The translations under genes were made by a program, and so were the position numbers. 64,000 nucleotides of DNA from Sphyrna mokarran (taxonomy: Eukaryota), in NCBI GenBank assembly GCA_024679065.1, contig JAGIQG010000016.1, positions 2,666,001-2,730,000 on the forward strand. Reading direction: 5' to 3'. The notes beneath the pieces were generated by a model. The model ran no database searches. It had not been told where the DNA came from and was given only the letters and a program-made list of their open reading frames with translations. Positions 4,901 to 43,469 of this stretch are shown here, one piece after another (within the stretch, counting starts at the first letter, position 1; each line of letters starts with the position of its first letter).

Positions 4901-6834
4901 GTTCCAGAAAAGGATCATTCCCTCCCATGAGTTTGGAAAAACAGCAAAGAATTAAACTCTGAAGCCCAACTCTGAAGAGGACTCATACAGACTCAAAATC
5001 TTAAATGTTTCTCTCTCTCCACAGATGCTGTCTTATCTGCTGAGTTTATCCAGCATTTTCTGTTTCTATTTCAAATTTCCAGCATCCGCAGTATTTTGCT
5101 TTTAATTTGATAGCATTAAACCCTGCAGAAGGTGAAGGAACATTTTCCCTAAACATCCCCTGCTTCCCTTCCCGCCACTATCTGAATTATTGCAGCTCCT
5201 TTCCATCCACCACAAAGATCACTTGCAATACACGGTACTTAAGGACACTGAAAGGCACAACCTTAACTGAGAGGGAACAAGATACCTGCTGATATTTTTT
5301 CCTGGGAATTGAGACAGTTAAAGAGTGCAGTGTTTACTGTGAGGATCCAGTATGATTCCGGATCACTGGGGGAGTTTCAGGTACAGCTCCTGAGAAAGGG
5401 GGATTGTTAAAGGGAGAACTGCACAGATTCCAGTGGAGCTGTGATCAGCAGCTATTGATTGTTGTTAATGTGACACACTGTCTGGTGATTGTTTGAGGCT
5501 AAACATTGAACAGAAAAGCAAAATATTGCAGGTAATGGAAATCTAAAATAAAGCTAACACGCAGGTCAGACAGGGAGGAAAAGTCAGTTAATATTGCAGT
5601 GGTAAATGTTCATTCCAGCACATTTCTGTTCCTCAGTTTTGTGTTACTATTTTCAGGAACACCAGATTTCTCAAAGTGCTTCAAAGTCAATGAAATACTT
5701 TCTGAAATGGATTCTCTGCTACAAGAGACATGTCAGTCTTGGATTTAATGCTCAAGTTCGGGAATGGGACTGATTTTGGGATCATTGCCGAGATGGAACC
5801 AGTTTAGAAGGAGACAGGCAATAAAGAGCTGAATCCTGGTAAAGATCAAAGACAGTTTCCCCCAGATCCACCTCTTTCCCTCTGGGATCTGAGACACTGA
5901 CAGTTCCAGCCATTCCCTTTGTTGCAATCCCAGTTGATGTTATACCCGATAGGAAGCTCCCAGAATAGATCCAGGCGGGGGGAAACTTTCCTTCACCCTC
6001 ATTCAGCTCTTTGTCCATGGGAATGGATGGAGAGGAGCTACAGGTACTGTCGGTGTCTCAGAGCTGGGAGGAAAGAGAGGGATCTGAGGGAAACTTTCCT
6101 TCATCCTCACCCCCATTCAGTTCTTTATCCAGAAAAATGGATGGAAAGGAGCTGCAGGGACTGTCAGCAGGCTATAGAGTGCAGCAATATTGGTACGAGG
6201 GAGAATGGGTAAGGGTGGGGGATCTGGGGGGAATGGGCTGAGGGCAATGGGCAATGGATGAAAAAAGAGTGGTGATGGTCAGACGGTGAGATCAGTGTCT
6301 GTTTCATATTACCTTACTAGGAGTGTGATTCTATTTACATTTTATTAAAGCAGAAATAGACCGGTTCAGCAAGCCACCTGGGTTTTTACATCCTGGGCAG
6401 TAGCTGCTTCCTTTATTTGCATTTCAGTTAATGATAACTAGGGCAATCTGTTTCCAGCTAATTCAGTTTCTGTCAACAGTTGTGCTTTGTCAATAATGAA
6501 TAAGACTCTGTCTCATACTTCTCCATAACAGATTGTGATTATCAGCCATGTATTGTTAAGAATCCCCAGCCTTAAAAATCCCCATGGTTCCCTATGTTGT
6601 CAGTACCTCACGATTTCCAATTTTCCTCACAGCATGGTGGGTGTACCTACACCTCAGGGACTGCAGCAGGTTCACAAAGTGGCTCACCCACCACCTTCTC
6701 AAGGGGCAATTAGAGATGGGCAATAAATGCTAGTCTAGCCAGTGACACCGCGTCCTGTAAATGAGTTAAAACATTTTGTTCGAGGTTTCCTTGTATATCA
6801 CATTGCTAAAAAGGGACACTCTTTTTTCCATATT

Positions 6835-8812: not shown

Positions 8813-10165
8813 TCACTAATAATGCAGTGCAGAGAGGAGTTAACATCCACTGGGGAGAGCACTTTGAGGACCTCCATAACCAGGATGCAAACTTTGCTGC
8901 AAATACCATTGACACCATCTCGCAATACATTACCTACTATCATCTCAGTGCAATCCCAGATCAAGGTGATGGTGAAAATGCCATTTGACAGCTGAAAAAC
9001 AAGAAGGCTCTGGCACAGGTGGAATCCTCACTGAAAAATTAAATCCGGCAGAGAGATACGCTTCACAAGAATATGCAATTTCATCCATTCGTGTCTGGAT
9101 GTAAGACAGCATAGTGAGAAGTCTCACAATCGCAGGTTAAAGTCCAACAGATTTATTTGTAGCAAATGCCACTCGCTTTTGGAACTGGCTGTTCCTTCTA
9201 AGACAGCATGTCAGCAGATTTCAGAGATGCCTTAATTGTGGCCATCTTCAAGAAAGAAGATGGGTCCAACTGTGGAAATTACAGAGGAATTTTCCTACTC
9301 TCCACTATGGGAAAAGTCATTGCAACAATTCTCCTCAAAGATTCCTCCCAGTGGCGGTACAGCTACTCCCTGACTCTCAGTGTGGCTTCGCCTGTTAGGA
9401 GACACAATGGACATGACCTTCGGCATACGGCAAATCCAGGTAAAGTGCAGGGAGCAGTATCAATCTCCATACATGGCCTTCTCCGACTCACAAAGGCTCG
9501 CAATTCGTCAACCGTGAGGGATTGTGGAACATCCTCCTCAAATCCTGCTTCCCACAGAAATTCGTCACCATTCTCCACCTGCTCCACAATAACACACAGT
9601 GATCCTCACCAGTACTGACCCTCTGATAGAGTTAATGTTTCACATTAATTGCCCTTCATTAAAACCAGAAAAAGGGAGAAACAAAATTGTTTTTATTTGT
9701 AATGATATAATTTATTCACTTAAATCTGGAAGACACATTACAAAACATGTTATAACTATAAATTGCGATGATATTCACATTCTCTCCAGAGATCTGATGA
9801 CATCAGAAACATTTCTATATTTTCGTTACAGAGTTCAATTCTTTTCAAACGATATACATCGGTTTTGCACTTCGGGGTACTTCAATACTCACTAATAATG
9901 CAGCGAAAAGAGGCACTTAACACTCACTGGGGAGAGCCCTTTGAGGATCTCTGTAACCAGGATCCAGCCTTTGACACAATGCCATTGACACCATCTCTCA
10001 ACATGCTACCCACCATCATCTCAGTGCAACCCCAGCTCAACGTGAGGGCAAAAATGCCATCTGACAGTTGAAAAATAACAAGGCCTCTGGCAGGGGTGGA
10101 ATCCTCACTGAAATATTAAATCCGGCAGAGATACTCTTCACAAGAATCCACAATCTCATCCCATG
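8813..10165 (+). mobile_element. RTE-type LINE fragments, with 8813-9090 repeated at 9888-10165
   Basis: HWGEHFEDL and DFRDALIVAIFKK...CGNYRGIFLLSTMGKVIA motifs. Confidence 0.75.
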
Positions 10166-10428: not shown

Positions 10429-10486
10429 GGACATAACTTCCACAAACTACTCTTGCTGCTGCTCAGTGTTGTTGCTGCTGTTTCAG
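10429..10486 (+). CDS. Gene A signal-peptide exon (GHNFHKLLLLLLSVVAAVS)
   Basis: tttcttgttgcag acceptor and tcag|gtaaga donor; 58 nt, phase 0 to 1; hydrophobic leader. Confidence 0.85.
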
Positions 10487-11250: not shown

Positions 11251-11595
11251 GTTTTTCACATTTCCCAGTTTCTGGGTTCCTTAGGGAGCAGGTTGTGCTG
11301 CCCTGTACCTACAAAGGGAATGTCCCAGTCTCAGATTTAATGGTAATCTGGGGGACACCCGAACATGCATTTTTGCACAAGTTTGTCAATGGAAATGATG
11401 ATTTGACAAAACAAGATCCACGGTTCAGAAACAGAACGAAGCTGTTCAAAGATCAACTGGAACAAGGAAACTGGTCAGTTCTGCTCTTTGACCTCAGGGA
11501 GTCAGACCGGAGCCAGTACGAGTGTCAGATCTACAAGAAGATTGATAAACAAAGTCATTTGGAGGGAATTAATTCAGTCGATCTCTTTGTAACAG
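11251..11595 (+). CDS. Gene A IgV exon 1, B7/butyrophilin/CD276-VTCN1-like V-set domain
   Basis: ttttccag acceptor, acag|gtgaga donor, 345 nt, phase 1-1; VVLPC..VIW..QDPRFRNRTKLFKDQL..GNWSVLL..D..YEC motif. Confidence 0.93.
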
Positions 11596-11917: not shown

Positions 11918-12262
11918 GTAACTTGCCTGTCCCAGTTTCTGGCTTCCTTGGGGAGCAGGTTGTGCTGCCCTGTACCTACAAAGGAAATGTTACCATCTCA
12001 GATTTACTGGTAATCTGGGGAACTGCCAAGGGTGATATCTTACACAGAGTGGTCAATGGAAACGATGATTTGACACAACAAGATCCAAGGTTCAGAAACC
12101 GAACAAAACTGTTCAAAGATCAACTGGAACAAGGAAACTGGTCAGTTCTGCTCTCTGACCTCAAGGAGTCAGACCAGAACCAGTATCAGTGTCAGATTTA
12201 CAAGAAGCTGGAGACAGGCTATTATTGGGAGCAATTTGAACTCGTCCATCTCTCTGTAACAG
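11918..12262 (+). CDS. Gene A IgV exon 2 (tandem duplicate V domain, ~70% aa identity to V1 by manual count)
   Basis: ttttccag acceptor, acag|gtgaga donor, 345 nt, phase 1-1; both Cys and the Trp are intact. Confidence 0.93.
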
Positions 12263-34330: not shown

Positions 34331-34929
34331 CTATCAGGCCTTGCAGCAACTTGCTCTTGGCAAAAATGCACAATCATTTCAAAATAAAAAAAGTGTTAAT
34401 GCATTTAAAATATCAAAATACTTGTTTAAATCATAATCACTTACTGCATTCATGTGTGTAAACTATTTTCTTGTTAGCTTCCAAGTCTGATTTAGTCATT
34501 TAACACAATGCTGGTAGTTCAATGTCTTAATACCTAATGGTTTAAAATCTTCTCTAACCTGCTACAATATTTTCTTTCCCCAACAGGATTGAATGGCTTC
34601 CTTCTGCACTGAAATATTGAGATATTTTACATTTTTTATATACAAGAATAATGTAGGTTCTTTAGTTTAATTTCTGTGATGCGAGGGTTGTCCTATGAGG
34701 CTAGATTGGATAGAATGATCTCTCTGAAATATCAAATTCAGAGATTTTGAAATGGAATAGAGTCCCAACCTCGGGATAAGGGGGCAGCCTGTTTGGACCA
34801 AGATGGGGAGAAATTTCTTCATCCAGAGGGTTGTAAATCTCTGGAATTCACTACCCCAGAGAGCCATGGATGCTCTGTGACTGAGTATATTCAAGATTGC
34901 AATGAATAGATTTTATGACACTTGGGGAA

Positions 34930-36120
34930 TTTCCTCCCTAACAATGCTGTTAGGGAGAGAATTCCAGGATTTTGACCCATCAGCTGCGAAGGAATAGCTA
35001 TACATTTCCAAGTCCGGACAATGAGTGGTTTGGAGGGAAACTTGCAGGTGGTGGTGTTCCCATTTATCTGCTGCACTTGTCCTTCTGGATGGGAGTTGTT
35101 GTAGATTCGAAAGGTGCAGCCTAAGGAACTTCAGTGTATTTCTGCAGTTCATCTTGTAAATAATTCATGATATTGAGTGTTTCTGATGGAGGGAGTGGAC
35201 GAGGTGCCAAACATGTGGGCCGCTTTGTCCTGGATGTTGTTGAGCTTTGAGTGTTGTTGGAACTCCATTATCAGGCAGGTGGAGAGTATTCCATGACAAT
35301 CCTGACTTGTAGGTGGTGGACAGGCTTTGGGGAGTTAGGTGATGAGTTACTTGTCACAGTATTCCAAGCTCCTAACCTTGTAGCCACAATGTTTATGTGA
35401 TAAGTCCAATTGCATTTCTGATCAATGATAATCCCAAGGATGTTGACAGTGGAGAATTCAGTGATGGGTAACCCCATTGAATGCTAAGGGCAGGGTTAGA
35501 ATAACACTTAGTGGAGATGGTCATCGCCTGGCATTTGTGAAGCACAAAAGTTACTTGCCACTTGTCAGCCCAAGTTTGGCAGCTCTTGTTGTGTTTGAAC
35601 ATGGACTGCTTCAGTATCTGGGGAGTTGTCAATGGTGCTGAACATTGCACAATCATCGATGAACATCCCCACTTCTGAGCTTATGACAGAGGGAAAGTTA
35701 TTGATGAAATAGTTGAAGATGGTTGGGCCGAGGACACTACTCCTGAGGAACTTCTGCAGAGATTCCTTGGAGCTAAAGATGGCTGACCTCCCCTCCCCCA
35801 CCCCCACAACCGAAATCATCTTTCTACATGCCAGATATGAGTCCAAGCAATGGTGACTTTGCCTCCTGATACTTAGTGTTACATTTGCAAGGGCTCCTTG
35901 ATGCCACACTTAGTTGAATGCAACTTTGATGTCAAGGGCTTTCATTCTCATCTCACCTTGGAACTCAGTCTTTCACATAGGTTTGAACCAAGGCTGGAAT
36001 GAAGTCAGGAGGTGAGTGATCCTGGCAAAACTTAAACTGGTCATCACCGAACAGGTTATTGCTGGGCACATCCTGCCTGATAGCATTGTCAACAACCTCT
36101 TCGTCACTTTACTGATGAAG
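34930..36120 (-). mobile_element. Old CR1/L2-superfamily LINE fragment
   Basis: SSVLGPTIFNYFINNFPSVISSEVGMFIDDC and WADKWQVTF motifs. Confidence 0.85.
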
Positions 36121-36234
36121 CAGTGATTGGCCAGGTTGGAACCTATGAAGCAGAGATGAAGATCAATAATCATTTGATTCAATGGACTTGGAGGCGTGAG
36201 GGGCTGAATGGCCACATCCTCTTCCTGTTAAAGT

Positions 36235-36688
36235 TCATGCAACAACTGAAAAGTTATCAAATGTTGTTTCTTTGTTTTCTGTCAATGCGTACTTGTAGAA
36301 ATGGCAAATATATTGAAAGAATTTATGCCTGAAGCTCGTAAATAACAACCCTTTGATTGGAAGTTGATCTTTCCTGAAATTCTGTGCACATTCTTCTGAG
36401 CAGCAGAGCGGAATATGATTGCTCATCCCAATCCCTAGCTCAAACTTTCCATCAGAAATCACTTGGTAACTACAATACTGGACTGATTGTTCCCTCTCTG
36501 ATCCAAGCTCAGTGCAGTCCTGGACAGTCCCATTCTCCAGAAGGTTTTGTTCTCCAGCCACTCCATCTTGCTGCTGAGATGCTATGTTCAGAAGGCCCCG
36601 TGCTTCACCTGACCAAGTCACCTCTCTCAAAGGGTCACCATTAGACACTTCATTTTGATTGCTGAGGTCTTTATTGCAAACAAAATAC
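36235..36688 (-). CDS. Gene B cytoplasmic exon (W|YFVCNKDLSNQNEVSNGDPLREVTW...SVQYCSYQVI...VVA*)
   Basis: ttttcctttctcccag acceptor; phase 2 matches the TM exon donor and enters ORF 36235..36648; DNA homologous to 16527-16745. Confidence 0.7.
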
Positions 36689-37194
36689 CTGGGAGAAAGG
36701 AAAATTGCAGATTGAAGGTTACTTTAAAACAATAGGTTATTGAGCACTTCAGCCCTGCTGTGCTATTCAACATGATCCCACATATCCTCCAGCCAAGCCC
36801 CACTTTCCACCCATTTCTATATCCCCCCATTCCCTTTGGCTGGAAAATCTCTCATCACAAGCTGCACGGTGATGAAGCACAGAGTGTAGAGGAGGCAACG
36901 GGCAAGAGCTGAACAGGAACTGTACTGACTGAAGCAGCAGACAAACAGAAAAATGATAGCTCAACTCTATGTTACACATCTTCTGAAGAAAACATCATAT
37001 GTTTAGTATTGTGTGTGACACAAACTGCAGAAATGGCAAAGACTCTATCGGGCTTTTGAGAAAAACATCCAGGAAGGAATGAGACTCGACTCAAACTGAT
37101 CAGGAACTGGAGCAACAGAGTGAAAAATCCAACAGGATTGCATTCAGGGTAGAATGGAGATTTTCCAGAGTTCCCTTGAGCAGGATCATTCCCA

Positions 37195-37401
37195 TGATGT
37201 AGAGATGCCGGTTTTGGGCTGGGGCAAGCACAGTAAGAAGTCTCACAACACCAGGTTAAAGTCCAACAGGTTTATTTGGTAGCACAAGCTTTCAGAGTGT
37301 CACTTCTTCAGGATTCATCTAAAGAAGAAGCGACACTCTGAAAGCTTGTGCTGCCAAATAATCCTGTTGGACTTTAACCTGGTGTTGTGAGACTTCTTAC
37401 T
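37195..37401. mobile_element. Palindromic Penelope-terminus-derived repeat
   Basis: Arms of ~80 bp: agtaagaagtctcacaacaccagg...cctggtgttgtgagacttcttact; related pieces at ~20990-21270, 31660-31815, 47405-47958, 51420-51560 and 56315-56530. Confidence 0.8.
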
Positions 37402-37514
37402 AGGATCACTCCCAGCAGGCTACATCCTCCTGTCCAGAGAATCCCCTCAGAATACTAGGCCTACTGGGATATACTTTCAAAACCAGAATTAACAGTATGA
37501 CCAATAAAACTCAC

Positions 37515-37611
37515 CAACTTAACACAGTTCGCATTATGACAGCCACAATTACACCAATAAAACAAATAAAACAAAGAATTCCAATGATTTCGCCAACAGA
37601 AAGTCCAGGAC
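37515..37611 (-). CDS. Gene B transmembrane exon (GPGLSVGEIIGILCFICFIGVIVAVIMRTVLS)
   Basis: ctgtctctag acceptor and ttg|gtgagt donor; 97 nt, phase 1 to 2; upstream intron 37612-37790 is homologous to 14835-15008. Confidence 0.85.
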
Positions 37612-38169
37612 CTAGAGACAGAATGAAACCATTAACAGACTGGGACACACTCACAAAACTAACAGTGGAGAACTTCAGCACTGAGTGTTTCAGAATCACC
37701 CCCAGTACAAGCAAATCCCTGGTTAATTCTAGTCCTGGAGGGATGTGGGAGGTTAGTTACCAATAATCACACAGACACCAGGCCACCCCACAATTCCTTG
37801 CATGTGCACACACACACACCCCTACCCCACCCCCCCATCACACACACATCCCTACACCCCCCACCCATCACACACACACCCCTAGCCTTCTACCCCTGGC
37901 TCCTACCGCCCCCATCCCCAAGTTCTCCCCTCCCAGCCCTCTCTTCCCTGGGTCTTCGCCGGCTTCCTCCACCACCACCTCCCCCCCCCTCCCCGGCTCT
38001 CTCCACTCTCCCTTCACCACCCTCCCATTGACTACACTTCTACACCTGTGACATTCTCTGCAGCTCCTTTCCACCCCCCATTACCCCGGTAAGGAGCTGA
38101 ATGGGGGGTGAGGATGAAGGAAAGGTTCCCCCCCCTTTCCCCCCCCCGGCTCTGAGACACTGACAGTAC

Positions 38170-38335
38170 CTGCAGCTCCTTTCCATCCATTCCCCACACA
38201 GGGATCAGCTCGGAGTCTCCACACTGAGAACAGGAGGGAAGAGAGACACACTGAATAAACTGCTGTCCTGCCTGGAGATGGTGAAGAAGTGTAAAGTCCA
38301 CTCATTAAGTTTGTTTGATTTTGTTGACGTGCCAT
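38170..38335 (-). CDS. Gene B candidate first coding exon (MARQQNQTNLMSGLYTSSPSPG...)
   Basis: ATG in strong context (ataATGg); two phase-1 donors in frame with the TM exon: cag|gtactg (exon end 38170) or non-canonical cag|gcagga (exon end 38272). Confidence 0.4.
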
Positions 38336-38359
38336 TATTTATTAGCTTTCCAACTGCTC

Positions 38360-38535
38360 CACATTGTATGGAGGGGGAGCTGACCATCCCCGCTCTCTCC
38401 TCCCTCTCCCCGGGTGTGGGTTGAACAGTTTCCCGGGAGCCGGTACTCGGATTCTTGTTTCACTCCAATCCCTTCAGGGGAAAAAGCAACTTTTAATCCG
38501 GCTTTTTCTGACAAGAGACTGGGACATTAATCCTC
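38360..38535 (-). promoter_or_regulatory. Putative gene B promoter, paralogous to the gene A promoter
   Basis: gagtgaaac (IRF-like) and tcccgggaa (GAS-like); core resembles 6921-6946; close copies at 59362-59602 and 60686-60924. Confidence 0.55.
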
Positions 38536-38693
38536 ACTCCCCCCGTCTCACTGTGAATAGAAAAGTCCTAAAAGAACTTGTCAATAACGGTAAATCAGGT
38601 GACATACAACTTCTTTACACGAAAGAAAAAGTGAAAGCACTGGAGAAACTGCGTTTACATTTCAATTGGAACATGATATTTCTTCATATGACC

Positions 38694-39737
38694 TTATCTG
38701 TCTGAACCCCTTTAATACAGGAACCAGACCCTCGGTTTATCTGTCTGAACCCCTTTAATACAGGAACCAGACCCTCGGTTTATCTGTCTGAACCCCTTTA
38801 ATACAGGAACCAGACCCTCGGTTTATCTGTCTCAACCCATTTAGTACAGGAGTCAGACTCTGGGTTTATCTGTCTGAACACCTTTAATACAGGAGTCAGA
38901 CTCTGGGTTTATCTGTCTGAACCCCTTTAATACAGGAGTCAGACTCTGGGTTTATCTGTCTGAACCCCTTTAATACAAGAGTCAGACTCTGGGTTTATCT
39001 GTCTGAACCCCTTTAATACAGGAGCCAGACTCTGGGTTTATCTGTCTGAACCCCTTTAATGCAGGAGTCAGACTCTGGGTTTATCTGTCTGAACCCCTTT
39101 AATACAGGAACCAGACTCTGGGTTTATCTGTCTGAACCCGTTTAATACAGGAACAAAACTCTGGGTTTATCTGTCTGAACCCATTTAATACAGGAGTCAG
39201 ACTCTGGGTTTATCTGTCTGAACCCCTTTAATACAGGAGTCAGACTCTGGGTTTATCTGTCTGAACCACTTTAATACAGGAGTCAGACTCTGGGTTTATC
39301 TGTCTGAACCCCTTTAATACAGGAGTCAGACTCTGGGTTTATCTGTCTGAACCCCTTTAATACAGGAGTCAGACTCTGGGTTTATCTGTCTGAACCCCTT
39401 TAATACAGGAGTGAGACTCTGGGTTTATCTGTCTGAACCCCTTTAATACAGGAGCCAGACTCTGGGTTTATCTGTCTGAACCCCTTTAATACAGGAGCCA
39501 GACTCTGGGTTTATCTGTCTGAACCCCTTTAATACAGGAGCCAGACTCTGGGTTTATCTGTCTGACCCCCTTTAATACAGGAGTCAGACTCTGGGTTTAT
39601 CTGTCTGACCCCCTTTAATACAGGAGCCAGACTCTGGGCTTATCTGTCTGAACCCCTTTAATACAGGAACAAAACTCTGGGTTTATCTGTCTGACCCCCT
39701 TTAATACAGGAACAAAACTCTGGGTTTATCTGTCTGA
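38694..39737 (+). repeat. 43-bp minisatellite, about 24 copies (tttatctgtctgaacccctttaatacaggagtcagactctggg)
   Basis: Head-to-tail near-perfect units with no spacers. Confidence 0.97.
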
Positions 39738-42198
39738 ATTTTATTGCCAATATAGAGTGAAATGGGGCAAATAAATCCAGACTCTATTGGAGAATAAAAG
39801 AGTTTGGAATGAAGAATAGGAGGAAAATTTTTCCTTAGTCAGTTGTCAAGTAGGAAATACAATTGACAAGCAGGTTAAAATCTACAGATAAATAAAGTGA
39901 CCGAGTGATTGAAGGAATGGGTCTGATTAGATAACAACATCCAGCTCCACACAGGAAGAGAAGGCTGTTGAGGTATTAGATGCATGTTTTGCAAATCAAG
40001 AAAATGTCAACAGAGAAACCACCAGGCAAGAAACCTCCAGTCAATAAATCAACAGCCACAAAAAGAGATCAGAAAGCAGCAAGATCAAACAAAACAGTGA
40101 AGAAGTTCGCAAATAATTTCCTGTGAAGGCAATAATAAGTTGAAAGACTTAAAAAAAAATAAATTGAAGACTGAGTACAATGTGAAAGCAGTGGCAGGAA
40201 GGAAGCGAAAGCAGCAATGCAAATTGAACCTGGAGACTTTTCTCACAGTCACCCAGTTGTCGCAGGAAAGAACTGATCCTCAGATCGCGTGTTCCCTGTC
40301 CCAGGACTCAGAGCAAATTTCAGATAGAAATTATTTTTAACAGTAATATTTGTACCACACAAATGCCAGGCAATGACCATCACCAATCAGAGACACTCTA
40401 ACCATCGCCACTTAACATTCAATGGTGTTACCATCACTGAATGCCCCCATTGTCAACATCGACCAGAAACTCCACTGGACTCACCACATAAACACAATGG
40501 CTACCAGAGCAGGTTTGAGGCTAGGAATACTGCGGCGAGTAACTCACCTCCTGACTTCCCAAAGCCTGTCCGCTATCTACAGTGTGGAGGGGTGATGACT
40601 ACACTACTAATTCATTACTACACTAGACGACTAATTCAAGGGACCTGGGTTCAAATCCTGCCATGGCAAATAGTGGAATTTAAATTCAATAATTAAGAAT
40701 CTACTGATCACCATGAAACCATTGTCGATTGTCAGGAAAACCCATCTGGTTCACTAACGTCCTTTAGGGAAGGAAATTTCCATCTTTACCTGTGACTCCA
40801 GAGCCACAGCACTGTGATTGACTCTCAACTGCCCTTCAAGGCAGCTAGGGATGGACAATAAATGCTGGCCAACCAACAACGCCTATATCCCGTGAATGAA
40901 TGAAAAAAAATGCAAGGACACAAGGTGGGAGTGTGATGGAATACTCCCCACTTGCCTGGATGGGTGCATGGTTGACCTCCTCTCAAGTAAGTTGCTCAGA
41001 TACTTGTCCCTCCCTTGATCTTGCCCATGTCTTTTCTTGCAAGAGCAGATTCTGAGAAGGCCGAACTCTGTCTGGACAGGTACTCGCTAATACAATCAAC
41101 CCTGATGTGATGTCAGTGGGACTCATGGTAGGAAGTATAGACAAGGGTTGGCAGAGGATTGTTAAGGCGTCACTTGTGGTGGTGGTTTGCGACACCACAT
41201 CTCCAAGTGTATGAACCTTGCCATGAAAAGGGCTTCTCTTGCTGTCCTGTCCTGCTGGACCCATGGCCATCTGTCCTCCATCCTTCAGTTCTTCCTCGGC
41301 CTCATTCTCTATATCCTCCTAGCCTTCCTCCTCTTCAGGGGCATCCAGAGAAAGTTAGGTGGATTGGCCATGCTAAATTGTCCTTTAGTGTCCCAAGTTG
41401 TATAGGTTATGGGGATTTGCAGGGCAAATGCATGGGATTACGAGGATAGAGCAGGGGGGATTGGCCTAGGTAGGATGCTCTGTCAGAATGTTGGTGTGGA
41501 TATAATGGGCCAAATGTGCTGTAGGGACTCTATAATCCCATGACTCACACTGAACACAATTTAAAATGTCATCAGACACTCTGATTAGGATCAAGAAATG
41601 GTGTTAAACATGGGAAACTGTGTGAATGTTTGATATTGAATCTTATTCAAAAGGAAACTCTGCCCTTTCAGATGATCAGGTGCTGCCTCATCACCTACAC
41701 TGTGTACCTGTCCATCACTGTCTCCCTCCTAACCCCCCCCCCCCACCTCCCCTCCCCCCCCCCCCCCCCAACCTGTCCAAACCCCCATCCACATCCTTGG
41801 GAACCCCCTCCCTCACCTGTTCCGATCTTTACATTTCAAGGTCAGTTTTCAGCTCCTGAATTCCACCTCACATTGTCTACCCCCTCAGTCTGTGATTTTT
41901 CTCCCAAGGGAGGGATGACCAATATCCTGGTGTGTTCTCCCAGCACATGTACAAATGGAAAACATGTGATTCAAAGTGCTGTACAGCTGCTCTATGCTTA
42001 CAAATATCTAGCACAAGCTGGTTTTAGTTAAAAGCCCTCAATGCCTGAGTTTTAACCTTCCCACACAAATGAAAGCAGTGAGGTACTAATCAGTGCTCCT
42101 TGTAAATCAAGCATCGCAGTGTAACCATGTGAAGCTCGGAATGTAATCTACCAGCAGGGAGGTTATATCTGTGGATAAATACTTTCAATCTTTTCCAG

Positions 42199-42478
42199 GT
42201 TTTTCACATTTCCCAGTTTCTGGGTTCCTTGGGAAGCAGGTTGTGCTGCCCTGTACCTACAAAGGGAATGTCCCAGTCTCAGATTTAATGGTAATCTGGG
42301 GGATATCCAAGAGTGAATTTTTATACAAATTTGTCAATGGGAAAGATGATTTGACAGAACAAGATCCATGGTTCAGAAACAGAACAAAGCTGTTCAAAGG
42401 TCAACTGGAACAAGGAAACTGGTCAGTTTGCTCTTTGACCTCAGAGAGTTAGACCAGGGTGAGTATCAGCGTCAGTTT
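42199..42478 (+). pseudogene. Truncated IgV pseudo-exon, paralog of gene A V1 (duplicated block 41838-42478 corresponds to ~10890-11530)
   Basis: Same acceptor and upstream intron as V1; 1-nt deletion at ~42428, second Cys changed to Arg (cgt), no G strand or donor. Confidence 0.9.
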
Positions 42479-43469
42479 AAAAGATAAGGCTTTCATCACC
42501 TTAACACTCTGGGTTACCAGCTGCCCTCTGGTGCCCATTCTGGTCAATTCCACTGTGGGGAGCACTACCCCTGTAATGTGAGTGAATATTAATGCTTTGT
42601 CCCATTTCATCTGCCCTTTCTTCAACTGTCCTAGAAAATTGCTAAGTACCTTATTGCCTGTGAGGTAATTGATTGAAGGAACTCATGATTCCCAAATGTG
42701 TACAAAAACACACATAACCCTGTAAATTTTGAGTGATTAAATTTACTTCACGCAGAATACAGCAAAGATGCAGAGTGAGACATACAGAACAATGATTCAA
42801 CACTTAGAAATATGAACTGATACTGATTAATTGTGGAATTTTATAGAAGTGTCTCCTATTCACAAATTGGGGGGGGGGGGTGGGCAGTGGCACTGTACTA
42901 GTCTGTTGGCATTTTTCTCTAATATCTGCAAAGAGCTGAAGAGACATGATCAAGTGAAGGTCTGAGTAAGGGGCTTCCACTTCTCTCATTGGGGATCAGA
43001 ACCCCCATTCACCTCCTGCACCCCAGTCACTCCCCGATTGCAGAATTGCACAGGCAACCTTCCCATCTCCCCTTAGGCCCTGCACTCTTCAGGCTCCAGC
43101 TCTTCCTCTTCAGATCGCCTCTCACCTTAGGTTCCAATGTGCCAGGCTGGCATTGCTAGGGTCCCAAGCCAGCATTGCCCAATGGGCATTGTGCCCTGCC
43201 CCAACCACCAGGGGGTCTGAATGGCCTCCAGTGCAACAGCGAGGCCATCATGACAGGTCTCCGTTATTGGGGACATTACAAGATCCTTGCTGGTGGGCAC
43301 CTCCACCAGCGAGGCTATTACGGGAAGTGAGCCTCGGCCAATTCTATCGCAGGCTCACTAATAATGTTTAAGATATTATAATCAACCCCACACCCTTCCT
43401 GGCTTCACAGTGGCAGGAAACCAGGCGTGGACCTGTTTTTTTGCCTCTTGTGATCTTACAGGCTAGCTA

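What the first reader, a model, noticed from the sequence alone, without database searches (positions are those of the whole stretch)
36235..38535. Ectodomain-less paralog of a B7-like receptor: a possible newly derived transmembrane adaptor
Seen: on the minus strand, promoter and intron-1 homologs of gene A (38030-38535) directly abut the intron before the TM exon (37612-37790). No leader or IgV exon lies between them, and none was found on the minus strand upstream in this window. The remaining exons still have good splice sites and compatible phases: ATG 38335 to a phase-1 donor (38170 or 38272), TM exon (phase 1 to 2), then a 454-nt open cytoplasmic exon. This predicts a 204-238 aa protein with a short N-terminus (NQT sequon), a TM with CxxC, a juxtamembrane Cys and a tail containing YCSYQVI. 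Established: LAT/NTAL/PAG/SIT-type adaptors have this topology. Inference: an Ig receptor converted by deletion into an adaptor or dominant-negative. The first-exon choice is uncertain, the tyrosines do not match a strict ITIM, and the distal tail may be read-through.
Basis: partly seen in the sequence, partly recalled or inferred. Interest (0 to 1): 0.85.

Follow-up and report, generated by a model that had tools for sequence, protein, structure and literature searches.

The report
Expressed shark receptor gene lacking Ig domain
A shark gene derived from a B7-like immune receptor has lost its ligand-binding domain but is still transcribed and spliced, and a second shark species carries a matching gene; whether it makes a working protein here is not settled.

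Summary
The anatomy is largely real. On the minus strand there is a family-type first exon (ATG 38190, donor after 38170), a 97-nt transmembrane (TM) exon (37611-37515) and a last exon (from 36688, stop 36237-36235). No leader, V or stalk exon lies between them.

An RNA-like run of the same organism gives contigs that stop at the predicted exon borders and leave the sampled introns uncovered. The locus is therefore transcribed and spliced.

Mustelus asterias has an annotated 240-aa protein, LOC144485970. It shares the odd TM segment (30 of 33 residues) and the long tail (79%), and it also has no V domain. It does keep a signal peptide and a 13-aa stalk. The V-less gene is therefore older than the split of the two species, not newly derived.

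- Homology to gene A starts at 38194, not 38535.
- The family's ATG is 38190 (phase 0), which runs out of frame if spliced straight to the TM exon.
- The contigs do not show an exon-1-to-TM junction. Instead, 97 RNA letters after exon 1 are unplaced.
- LAT-type adaptor features are not met.

The conserved tail motif has changed faster here than in the Mustelus protein (8 changes against 1). This is a new variant of a known kind, of moderate interest.

The parts
38170..38343 (-). First exon as seen in RNA. It holds two upstream ATGs (38335, 38305; phase 1 at the donor) and the family's start ATG at 38190 (MDGKELQ, phase 0). The donor CAG|GT follows 38170.
   Evidence: X2 contig of 276 nt lies on 38165-38343 with 1 other letter. 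tblastn of P0001 residues 1-7 and 39-45 gives 7/7.
38027..38194 (-). Two copies of a roughly 105-nt unit (the end of exon 1 plus the start of intron 1), homologous to gene A 6019-6188. The second copy has lost the GT donor.
   Evidence: blastn 80%, alignment. P0001 residues 1-46 read through the same unit.
37803..38026 (-). G-rich, low-complexity junction that stands in place of about 8.6 kb of the gene A layout (leader, V1, V2). No coding exon was found in it.
   Evidence: Three-frame reading and splice-site enumeration. High DNA depth there shows a repeated sequence.
37612..37802 (-). Intron just before the TM exon, homologous to gene A 14818-15011. It contains a block that is identical in A and B (about 37752-37717).
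   Evidence: blastn 80.6%, alignment. X2 depth is 0 in 37648-37781.
37515..37611 (-). TM exon, 97 nt, phase 1 to 2. It encodes GPGLSVGE followed by a hydrophobic segment of about 19 residues and then RTVLS.
   Evidence: X2 contig of 154 nt lies on 37513-37613 with unplaced flanks of 26 and 27 letters. 30 of 33 residues match P0001. Best 15-residue hydropathy window scores 3.39.
36235..36688 (-). Coding part of the last exon: a juxtamembrane stretch, the family's conserved tail motif (about 36657-36520), then a 93-codon extension past the position where the family normally stops. Stop at 36237-36235.
34950..36234 (-). 3' untranslated part of the last exon, at least 1.28 kb, running into repeats.
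   Evidence: X2 contig of 1740 nt lies exactly on 34950-36689.

Best explanation
This locus (called B here) is this shark's counterpart of Mustelus asterias LOC144485970. It is a member of a shark cluster of B7-like single-pass V-set receptors that lost its V exon before the two species split.

Shown: B is transcribed. Its TM exon and last exon are used with exactly the predicted borders.

Inferred: the product is a membrane protein with almost no ectodomain. It keeps the family's conserved cytoplasmic motif, and loss of the family's stop adds about 93 residues. It amounts to a permanent version of the V-skipped isoforms that RefSeq predicts for family genes in Hemiscyllium. It could occupy the family's intracellular partner, or pair with full-length chains, without binding ligand, so it would act as a modulator or decoy rather than a LAT-type adaptor.

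In this species the gene looks to be under weakened constraint. The assembly lacks the leader and stalk exons that the Mustelus protein has, the family ATG is out of frame with a direct exon-1-to-TM splice, and the tail motif has taken 8 lineage-specific replacements.
For: - Exon usage. Contig ends fall at 36689, 37513/37613 and 38165, and sampled introns have depth 0.
- Orthology-like match: P0001 is the best hit of the tail exon (E 2.7e-59, 79%; 81%). Its TM exon matches 30/33, and the tail extension is found only in P0001 among 9 hits from 1.84 billion representatives. P0001 has no Pfam hit above the curated cut-off (one sub-threshold ECSCR match at E 0.0049, 17.2 bits against a 27-bit cut-off). 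It lies on the same 636,807-nt contig as the V-V protein P0030, which matches gene A.
- Family membership: exon 1 matches 7/7, the TM exon starts GPGLS, and 32 of 48 tail columns equal the family consensus.
- V-less isoforms elsewhere: P0008 against P0014, and P0027 against P0028, in Hemiscyllium.
- The open extension is unusual: 283 of 20000 simulated sequences stay open for 93 codons.
- Weakened constraint: 8 B-only against 1 P0001-only replacements in 48 columns (chi2 5.44, p 0.02; exact p 0.04). Related organisms C and D read the family letters at 36579, and C also at 36584, 36586 and 36587 (table 3).
Against: - No leader or stalk exon exists on the minus strand in the window. The Mustelus-type protein therefore cannot be encoded by the assembly as it stands.
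- The 97 unplaced letters after exon 1 in the 276-nt contig were never seen, so the 5' half of the mRNA is unknown.
- Run X2 is only guessed to be RNA, and it is a single run.
The absence of a V exon in Mustelus, and dN/dS, are therefore untested.
- About 80% amino-acid identity in the extension is roughly what neutral drift would give (my estimate, not computed).
- The decoy or modulator role is pure inference.
Confidence: 0.5

Rival explanations
1. Transcribed pseudogene. After the old V loss, a further deletion in this lineage removed the leader and stalk. The RNA is still made and spliced, but no useful protein is made.
For: - No leader or stalk in the window.
- The family ATG 38190 ends in phase 0, and the TM exon read after a phase-0 donor stops after 20 codons.
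- Two upstream out-of-frame ATGs lie in the RNA-covered exon.
- 8:1 excess of replacements at otherwise near-invariant tail positions.
- The last exon runs into repeats.
Against: - The ORF of the TM exon plus tail is intact over 181 codons.
- The 93-codon extension is open (283/20000 by chance).
- There is no frame-breaking difference from P0001 across the TM exon and tail, only one in-frame 5-residue gap.
- ATG 38335 has A at -3 and G at +4 and is in phase with the TM exon.
- The 276-nt contig carries about 100 extra letters, the length of the leader plus stalk of P0001.
Confidence: 0.33
2. Translation starts at ATG 38335, exon 1 splices directly to the TM exon, and the result is a 238-aa signal-less type III membrane adaptor of the LAT/NTAL/PAG kind.
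For: - ATG 38335 is the first ATG of the RNA contig, has a strong context and is in phase 1.
- The donor and acceptor are canonical.
- The interval has no other plausible exon.
Against: - The 276-nt contig continues after exon 1 with 97 letters that cannot be the TM exon, because the TM exon is already held whole by the 154-nt contig. This relies on my reading that de Bruijn contigs do not share words.
- This frame is not the one the family uses (P0024 and P0030 read the other frame).
- Adaptor motifs are absent or not conserved.
Confidence: 0.07
3. The TM and tail exons are the 3' end of a larger gene whose leader and V exons lie outside the window, or in sequence missing from the assembly. 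Alternatively, the exon-1 contig comes from a near-identical paralog.
For: - Both flanks of the TM contig and the 97-letter tail of the exon-1 contig are unplaced.
- DNA depth over 38050-38317 is 24-26 against 13-17 for neighbouring single-copy contigs, so a second similar exon 1 may exist.
- Family V exons and leader exons also end in AG.
Against: - No V or leader lies on the minus strand in the 25 kb upstream.
- The closest relative P0001 has no V domain.
- Family genes in this window span about 10 kb.
Confidence: 0.1

Closest known systems
Mustelus asterias LOC144485970, 'uncharacterized protein', 240 aa (P0001)
   Same: Same derived TM segment (30/33). Same exit from the TM exon into YFVC. 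Same tail motif and the same extension past the family's stop (79-81% identity). No V-set domain. Start MDGKELQ. It lies in the same gene cluster as the gene A counterpart P0030.
   Different: P0001 has a leader (about 20 residues) and a 13-residue stalk that are absent from this assembly. Its two TM positions are S and F where this locus has C and C. It has fewer changes in the tail motif (1 against 8). Its C-terminus is shorter. It is an automatic model, and its DNA was not seen.
V-skipped predicted isoforms of family genes in Hemiscyllium ocellatum (P0008, 161 aa; P0027, 145 aa)
   Same: Leader joined to stalk, TM and tail without the V domain. This gives the same topology as P0001.
   Different: They are splice isoforms of genes that still have a V exon (P0014, P0028). 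They have the canonical TM segment and a tail that ends at the family's stop. Here the V exon is gone from the DNA.
Full-length family members named MOG-like, CD276 antigen homolog or SCN4B-like in RefSeq of six shark genera; gene A of this window
   Same: First exon, start of the TM exon and cytoplasmic motif. The V domain of gene A is nearest to B7-H4 (4gos, E 1.4e-14) and CD276.
   Different: This locus has no V-set domain. It has a diverged TM segment without the basic RKRQRR stop-transfer, and a tail extended by 93 codons.
Transmembrane adaptor proteins LAT, NTAL, PAG, SIT (features recalled, not from a call)
   Same: Possibly a tiny ectodomain, one TM segment and a long tail.
   Different: No sequence relation. 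No conserved juxtamembrane CxxC. No YxN, ITAM or ITIM. It derives from an Ig receptor family whose conserved tail has no tyrosine motif.

Membership tests
Shark B7-like V-set receptor cluster (RefSeq: MOG-like / CD276 antigen homolog / SCN4B-like) | Short first coding exon MDG(K/E)ELQ ending in phase 0 | tested here: met
   38190-38170 matches 7/7 to P0001. It is 21 nt, phase 0.
Shark B7-like V-set receptor cluster (RefSeq: MOG-like / CD276 antigen homolog / SCN4B-like) | Leader exon (...KLLLLLLSVVAAVS), phase 0 to 1 | tested here: not met
   The only leader in the window is gene A's, at 10429-10486 (+). The 97 unplaced RNA letters after exon 1 leave open that the mRNA has one.
Shark B7-like V-set receptor cluster (RefSeq: MOG-like / CD276 antigen homolog / SCN4B-like) | One or two V-set domains | tested here: not met
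   No Pfam hit for the tail exon or the exon-1 ORF. There is no minus-strand V in the window. The only other V copy is a frame-shifted one on the + strand at 42195-42496.
Shark B7-like V-set receptor cluster (RefSeq: MOG-like / CD276 antigen homolog / SCN4B-like) | TM exon entered in phase 1 and beginning GPG(L/V/P) | tested here: met
   37612-37598 reads GPGLS. Phase.
Shark B7-like V-set receptor cluster (RefSeq: MOG-like / CD276 antigen homolog / SCN4B-like) | Conserved cytoplasmic motif NQNEASNG.PL.EVTCSGEAR.L..TAPEHQDGAAGEQNLLGNG.VQH | tested here: met
   32 of 48 columns equal the consensus of 29 proteins, 7 more are shared with P0001, and 8 are private changes.
Transmembrane adaptor proteins (LAT/NTAL/PAG/SIT); features recalled from general knowledge | Very short ectodomain and a single TM segment | tested here: inconclusive
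   A single hydrophobic segment is present. The N-terminal part of the product is unknown because the 5' exons of the mRNA are unresolved.
Transmembrane adaptor proteins (LAT/NTAL/PAG/SIT); features recalled from general knowledge | Cytosolic juxtamembrane CxxC for palmitoylation | tested here: not met
   C-F-I-C lies inside the hydrophobic run, and both Cys are S/F in P0001. One conserved Cys follows the TM segment (YFVC).
Transmembrane adaptor proteins (LAT/NTAL/PAG/SIT); features recalled from general knowledge | Several tyrosine docking motifs (YxN, ITAM, ITIM) | tested here: not met
   The contexts of the 6 Tyr are listed. None is YxN, none is a spaced YxxL/I pair, and VQYCSY and CSYQVI each miss one ITIM position.
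B7 family proper (CD80/86, PD-L1, B7-H3, B7-H4) | IgV plus IgC ectodomain | tested here: not met
   This locus has no Ig domain. Only the V exons of gene A resemble B7-H4/CD276 V domains, and gene A is V-V without a C domain.

The most novel reading that the evidence does not exclude
The family made its own signalling partner chain. V-exon loss, a remodelled TM segment and a stop-loss extension carrying a conserved YCxYQVI stretch turned a receptor into a ligand-blind chain. In the remodelled segment an acidic residue sits at the outer edge, where full-length members carry R-x-R. The chain would pair with full-length paralogs through that opposite charge and give them a new cytoplasmic output, in the manner of DAP12/FcR-gamma chains but born from the receptor gene itself.
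Probability: 0.06. Interest if true: 0.8.

Novelty: new variant of a known kind. Interest (0 to 1): 0.38.

Why it matters
Receptor families often gain regulators by losing domains. Here the loss is fixed in the DNA of a shark-specific B7-like family, and three text searches found nothing in print on that family or on its strongly conserved cytoplasmic motif.

If the V-less chain is functional, it offers a natural tool for finding what that motif binds. It would also be a case of coding sequence born from a 3' UTR by stop loss.

If it is decaying in this species but intact in Mustelus, it gives a dated series of steps in the death of a receptor gene: V loss, then leader loss, then faster tail change.

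Tried and rejected
1. Cryptic exon between exon 1 and the TM exon. I listed all AG...AG|GT/GC segments in 38169-37612 (51 candidates). I also listed all acceptors followed by letters within one mismatch of GTACT. Inside the interval there is none; the only sites listed there are the donor's own position (38169, which defines the pattern) and the TM exon start (37611), with the last-exon start (36688) further downstream. No frame encodes a leader-like stretch. Rejected.

2. The 97-letter tail of the 276-nt contig being the TM exon (also 97 nt). Rejected, because the 154-nt contig already holds the whole TM exon, and X2 depth over 37514-37647 (6.48) equals that contig alone.

3. X2 depth of 12.1 and 0.53 in 37782-38049 as the missing exon. 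The two figures fit one 95-nt piece of depth about 17.8 better than the 16.6 of the exon-1 contig. The place is a genomic repeat (DNA depth 772 against about 15). Left unexplained.

4. An inversion linking the plus-strand V copy (41824-42484, 90% to gene A) to this gene. Rejected: it lies outside the exon-1-to-TM interval, is more similar to A than the rest of the locus is (90% against 80%), and is frame-shifted near 42428.

5. A 23-nt frameshift in the TM exon compensated by a new acceptor. Rejected: the acceptors of A and B align, and both tails need phase 2. 97 nt fits an in-frame shortening of a canonical exon of about 121 nt. It is gene A's 120-nt exon that is off by one.

7. Fishing transcript-derived proteins of this species: none is in the protein collection, so the species appears unannotated there.

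8. Literature: three searches, listings only, no paper opened. Nothing on this family or its tail motif. The two hits for MDGKELQ are unrelated neuroanatomy papers. Supplements were not consulted.

9. No structure prediction was run. With only two sequences for the tail it would not have been informative.
Full report
WHAT IS THERE

The window has no N. It holds a plus-strand gene A. tblastn with three family proteins and direct reading give these exons for A:
- a first coding exon MDGEELQ at 6023-6043
- a leader exon at 10429-10486
- two V exons at 11251-11595 and 11918-12262, both Pfam V-set (E 1.4e-06 and 3.9e-10)
- a TM exon from 15009
- a tail exon near 16525-16728

The V exon of A is nearest to the solved V domains of B7-H4 (4gos, E 1.4e-14) and CD276, so 'B7-like' holds for the V domain.

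The finding concerns a minus-strand locus, here called B. blastn shows only three stretches of B that resemble A:
- 38027-38194 with A 6019-6188 (80%)
- 37609-37802 with A 14818-15011 (80.6%)
- 36839-36894 with A 16354-16408 (78.6%)

Between the first two lie 225 G-rich bases, where A has about 8.6 kb with its leader and V exons. No leader, V or stalk coding is found on the minus strand anywhere in the window.

CORRECTIONS TO THE OBSERVATION

- Homology to A begins at 38194, five bases before an ATG, not at 38535.
- 38373-38538 is a dispersed repeat with two other 91% copies in the window. It is not a promoter homolog.
- The shared stretch is a unit of about 105 nt that is itself repeated: A 5980, 6088 and 7197, and two copies in B.
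- The conserved start of the family, MDGKELQ, is at 38190-38170 and ends in phase 0.
- The TM exon needs phase 1. Read after a phase-0 donor, it stops after 20 codons.
- A 90% copy of A's V1 exon with its upstream intron lies at 41824-42484. It is on the plus strand and frame-shifted near 42428, and it is not part of B.

RNA EVIDENCE

One search for runs gave a DNA-like run X1 and a small run X2 of the same organism. X2 has 98 million letters, is guessed to be RNA, and holds 34% of the sampled words. The single read-laying run (34700-38690; four runs, all as contigs) shows the following for X2:
- a 1740-nt contig lying exactly on 34950-36689
- a 154-nt contig of which letters 28-128 lie on 37513-37613
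- a 276-nt contig of which letters 1-179 lie on 38165-38343, with one other letter
- depth 0 in 36710-37111, 37648-37781 and 38452-38690

A run this small cannot hold a single-copy locus as DNA, and the contig ends sit on the predicted splice sites. I therefore take X2 as RNA and the locus as transcribed and spliced.

The 154-nt contig is 28 + 97 + 29 letters once the two-letter overlaps with the splice sites are counted. That is the size expected for a 31-word graph path through the TM exon between two shared neighbours. The 29-letter side fits the start of the last exon, because the 1740-nt contig starts there. I did not see its letters, and the joint table lists only 15 rows and leaves 1852 unshown.

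THE UNRESOLVED 5' HALF

The 276-nt contig runs on for 97 letters after 38165.
- They cannot be the TM exon, or more than about 30 letters of the last exon, because those words are already in the other two contigs.
- They are not the contiguous intron.
- X2 depth over 38050-38317 equals the 276-nt contig alone (2.35 and 16.6).
- No canonical exon in 38169-37612 begins with letters within one mismatch of those that follow the donor.

The arithmetic 174 + 100 + 2 = 276 equals exon 1, plus the combined length of leader (61) and stalk (39) of the Mustelus protein, plus two shared letters. With the family ATG that would be in frame with the TM exon. This is arithmetic, not sequence.

If it is right, the leader and stalk are missing from this assembly or haplotype, or the contig comes from a near-identical paralog. 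DNA depth over exon 1 is 24-26 against 13-17 nearby.

RELATIVES

The tail exon (150 aa) finds M. asterias LOC144485970 (P0001, 240 aa) at E 2.7e-59 and 79% identity. Other shark proteins match far more weakly, and only over the first third of the query.

P0001 reads as follows:
- MDGKELQ (twice, reading through the repeated unit)
- a leader
- a 13-residue Pro/Thr stalk
- the same unusual TM segment (30/33 identical to B)
- the same junction into YFVC
- the tail motif and the extension

It has no Pfam hit above the curated cut-off (one sub-threshold ECSCR match at E 0.0049). It lies on the same contig as P0030, a 336-aa V-V protein that matches gene A down to its short tail.

A search with P0001 gave 29 proteins from Mustelus, Scyliorhinus, Hemiscyllium, Chiloscyllium, Rhincodon, Cetorhinus, Carcharodon and Heterodontus. 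Most have one V-set domain. All share the tail motif, which is nearly invariant. No protein of this window's species is in the collection.

An exhaustive profile-free scan of 1.84 billion representatives found 9 hits. Only P0001 covers the extension.

Hemiscyllium has predicted V-skipped isoforms (P0008 against P0014, P0027 against P0028), so a V-less chain is a recurring product of this family. The V-less state of B is thus shared with Mustelus and is not new. Whether its V exon is deleted or only skipped is unknown.

CONSTRAINT

For a coding role:
- The extension past the family's stop is 93 open codons, which happens in 283 of 20000 simulated sequences of like composition.
- B and P0001 differ by no frame-breaking gap over the TM exon and tail, only one five-residue gap.

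Against a coding role:
- In the 48-column conserved motif, B has 8 private replacements against 1 in P0001 (chi2 5.44, p 0.02; exact p 0.04). They fall at positions that are 81-100% conserved in the other proteins.
- At four of the changed nucleotides, related organism C reads the family's letters, and D does so at one (36579, 36584, 36586, 36587, table 3). These changes are therefore recent in this lineage.
The YCxYQVI stretch and the Cys after the membrane are kept.

COMPARISON WITH ADAPTORS

The defining features of LAT-type adaptors are recalled, not taken from a call. None is met apart from the possible topology. There is no homology, no conserved juxtamembrane CxxC, and no YxN, ITAM or strict ITIM among the six tyrosines. 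What B keeps is the family's own tyrosine-free motif. The most economical mechanism is therefore a ligand-blind family chain that competes for, or adds to, whatever that motif engages.

VERDICT

B is a real, expressed, V-less member of a shark B7-like receptor cluster, with a counterpart in a second species. It is a new variant of a known kind.

The proposed start, the direct first junction, the 'promoter homolog' and the adaptor analogy are not supported. Whether this species still makes a membrane protein from it (my odds about one half), or only a spliced RNA from a decaying gene (about one third), depends on roughly 100 RNA letters that the tools did not let me read.

The spliced model was searched exon by exon. 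The joined step was left out.

Noticed in passing
window 15009-15128 and 16500-16730 (+): Gene A's TM exon is 120 nt (phase 1 to 1), but the conserved tail frame needs phase 2. That frame reads QPTRYSMNLNETSNDTPLTGEIC then stop, like Mustelus P0030. As assembled, A would end after about 7 residues in another frame. This is a one-base difference from the Mustelus counterpart, or another donor is in use.
   Followed up: partly
window 41824-42496 (+): A 90% copy of gene A's intron-1 end plus V1 exon, on the strand opposite to B, frame-shifted near 42428. There is no leader next to it. It is a lone pseudo-V exon from a more recent duplication than B.
   Followed up: partly
window 38694-39738: A tandem array of about 24 copies of a 43-bp unit (88-95% alike), beginning 350 bp upstream of the RNA-covered first exon of B.
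   Followed up: no
window 37232-37401: An inverted pair of a very high-copy short element (arms 90.7% complementary over 172 nt) inside the intron between the TM and last exons. DNA word depth there is in the millions. Other copies lie at 9108, 21009, 31729, 47404, 51418 and 56438.
   Followed up: no
window 37717-37752 (-) and 14866-14905 (+): A block of about 36-39 nt just upstream of the TM exon is identical in A and B, while the surrounding intron is 80% alike. In one frame it reads PPT...PG with two stops. It may be a dead copy of the family's stalk exon, or a conserved splicing element. It is not covered by RNA in X2.
   Followed up: partly
proteins P0002, P0020, P0029 (Hemiscyllium, Cetorhinus, Rhincodon): Some family members carry, instead of or before the V domain, a Cys-rich segment of about 100 residues (...NIM.NKC.T..Q.P.LK.G......G.TC.GNYRA.FN.S.CY..C...) with no Pfam hit. 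This is a second kind of ectodomain on the same leader, TM and tail.
   Followed up: no
window 36174-36307: The last ~23 codons of B's open frame and the start of its 3' UTR lie in a moderately repeated sequence. DNA depth is 582 in X1 and 4400 in X6, against about 15 nearby. The C-terminal end of the ORF is probably repeat-derived.
   Followed up: no
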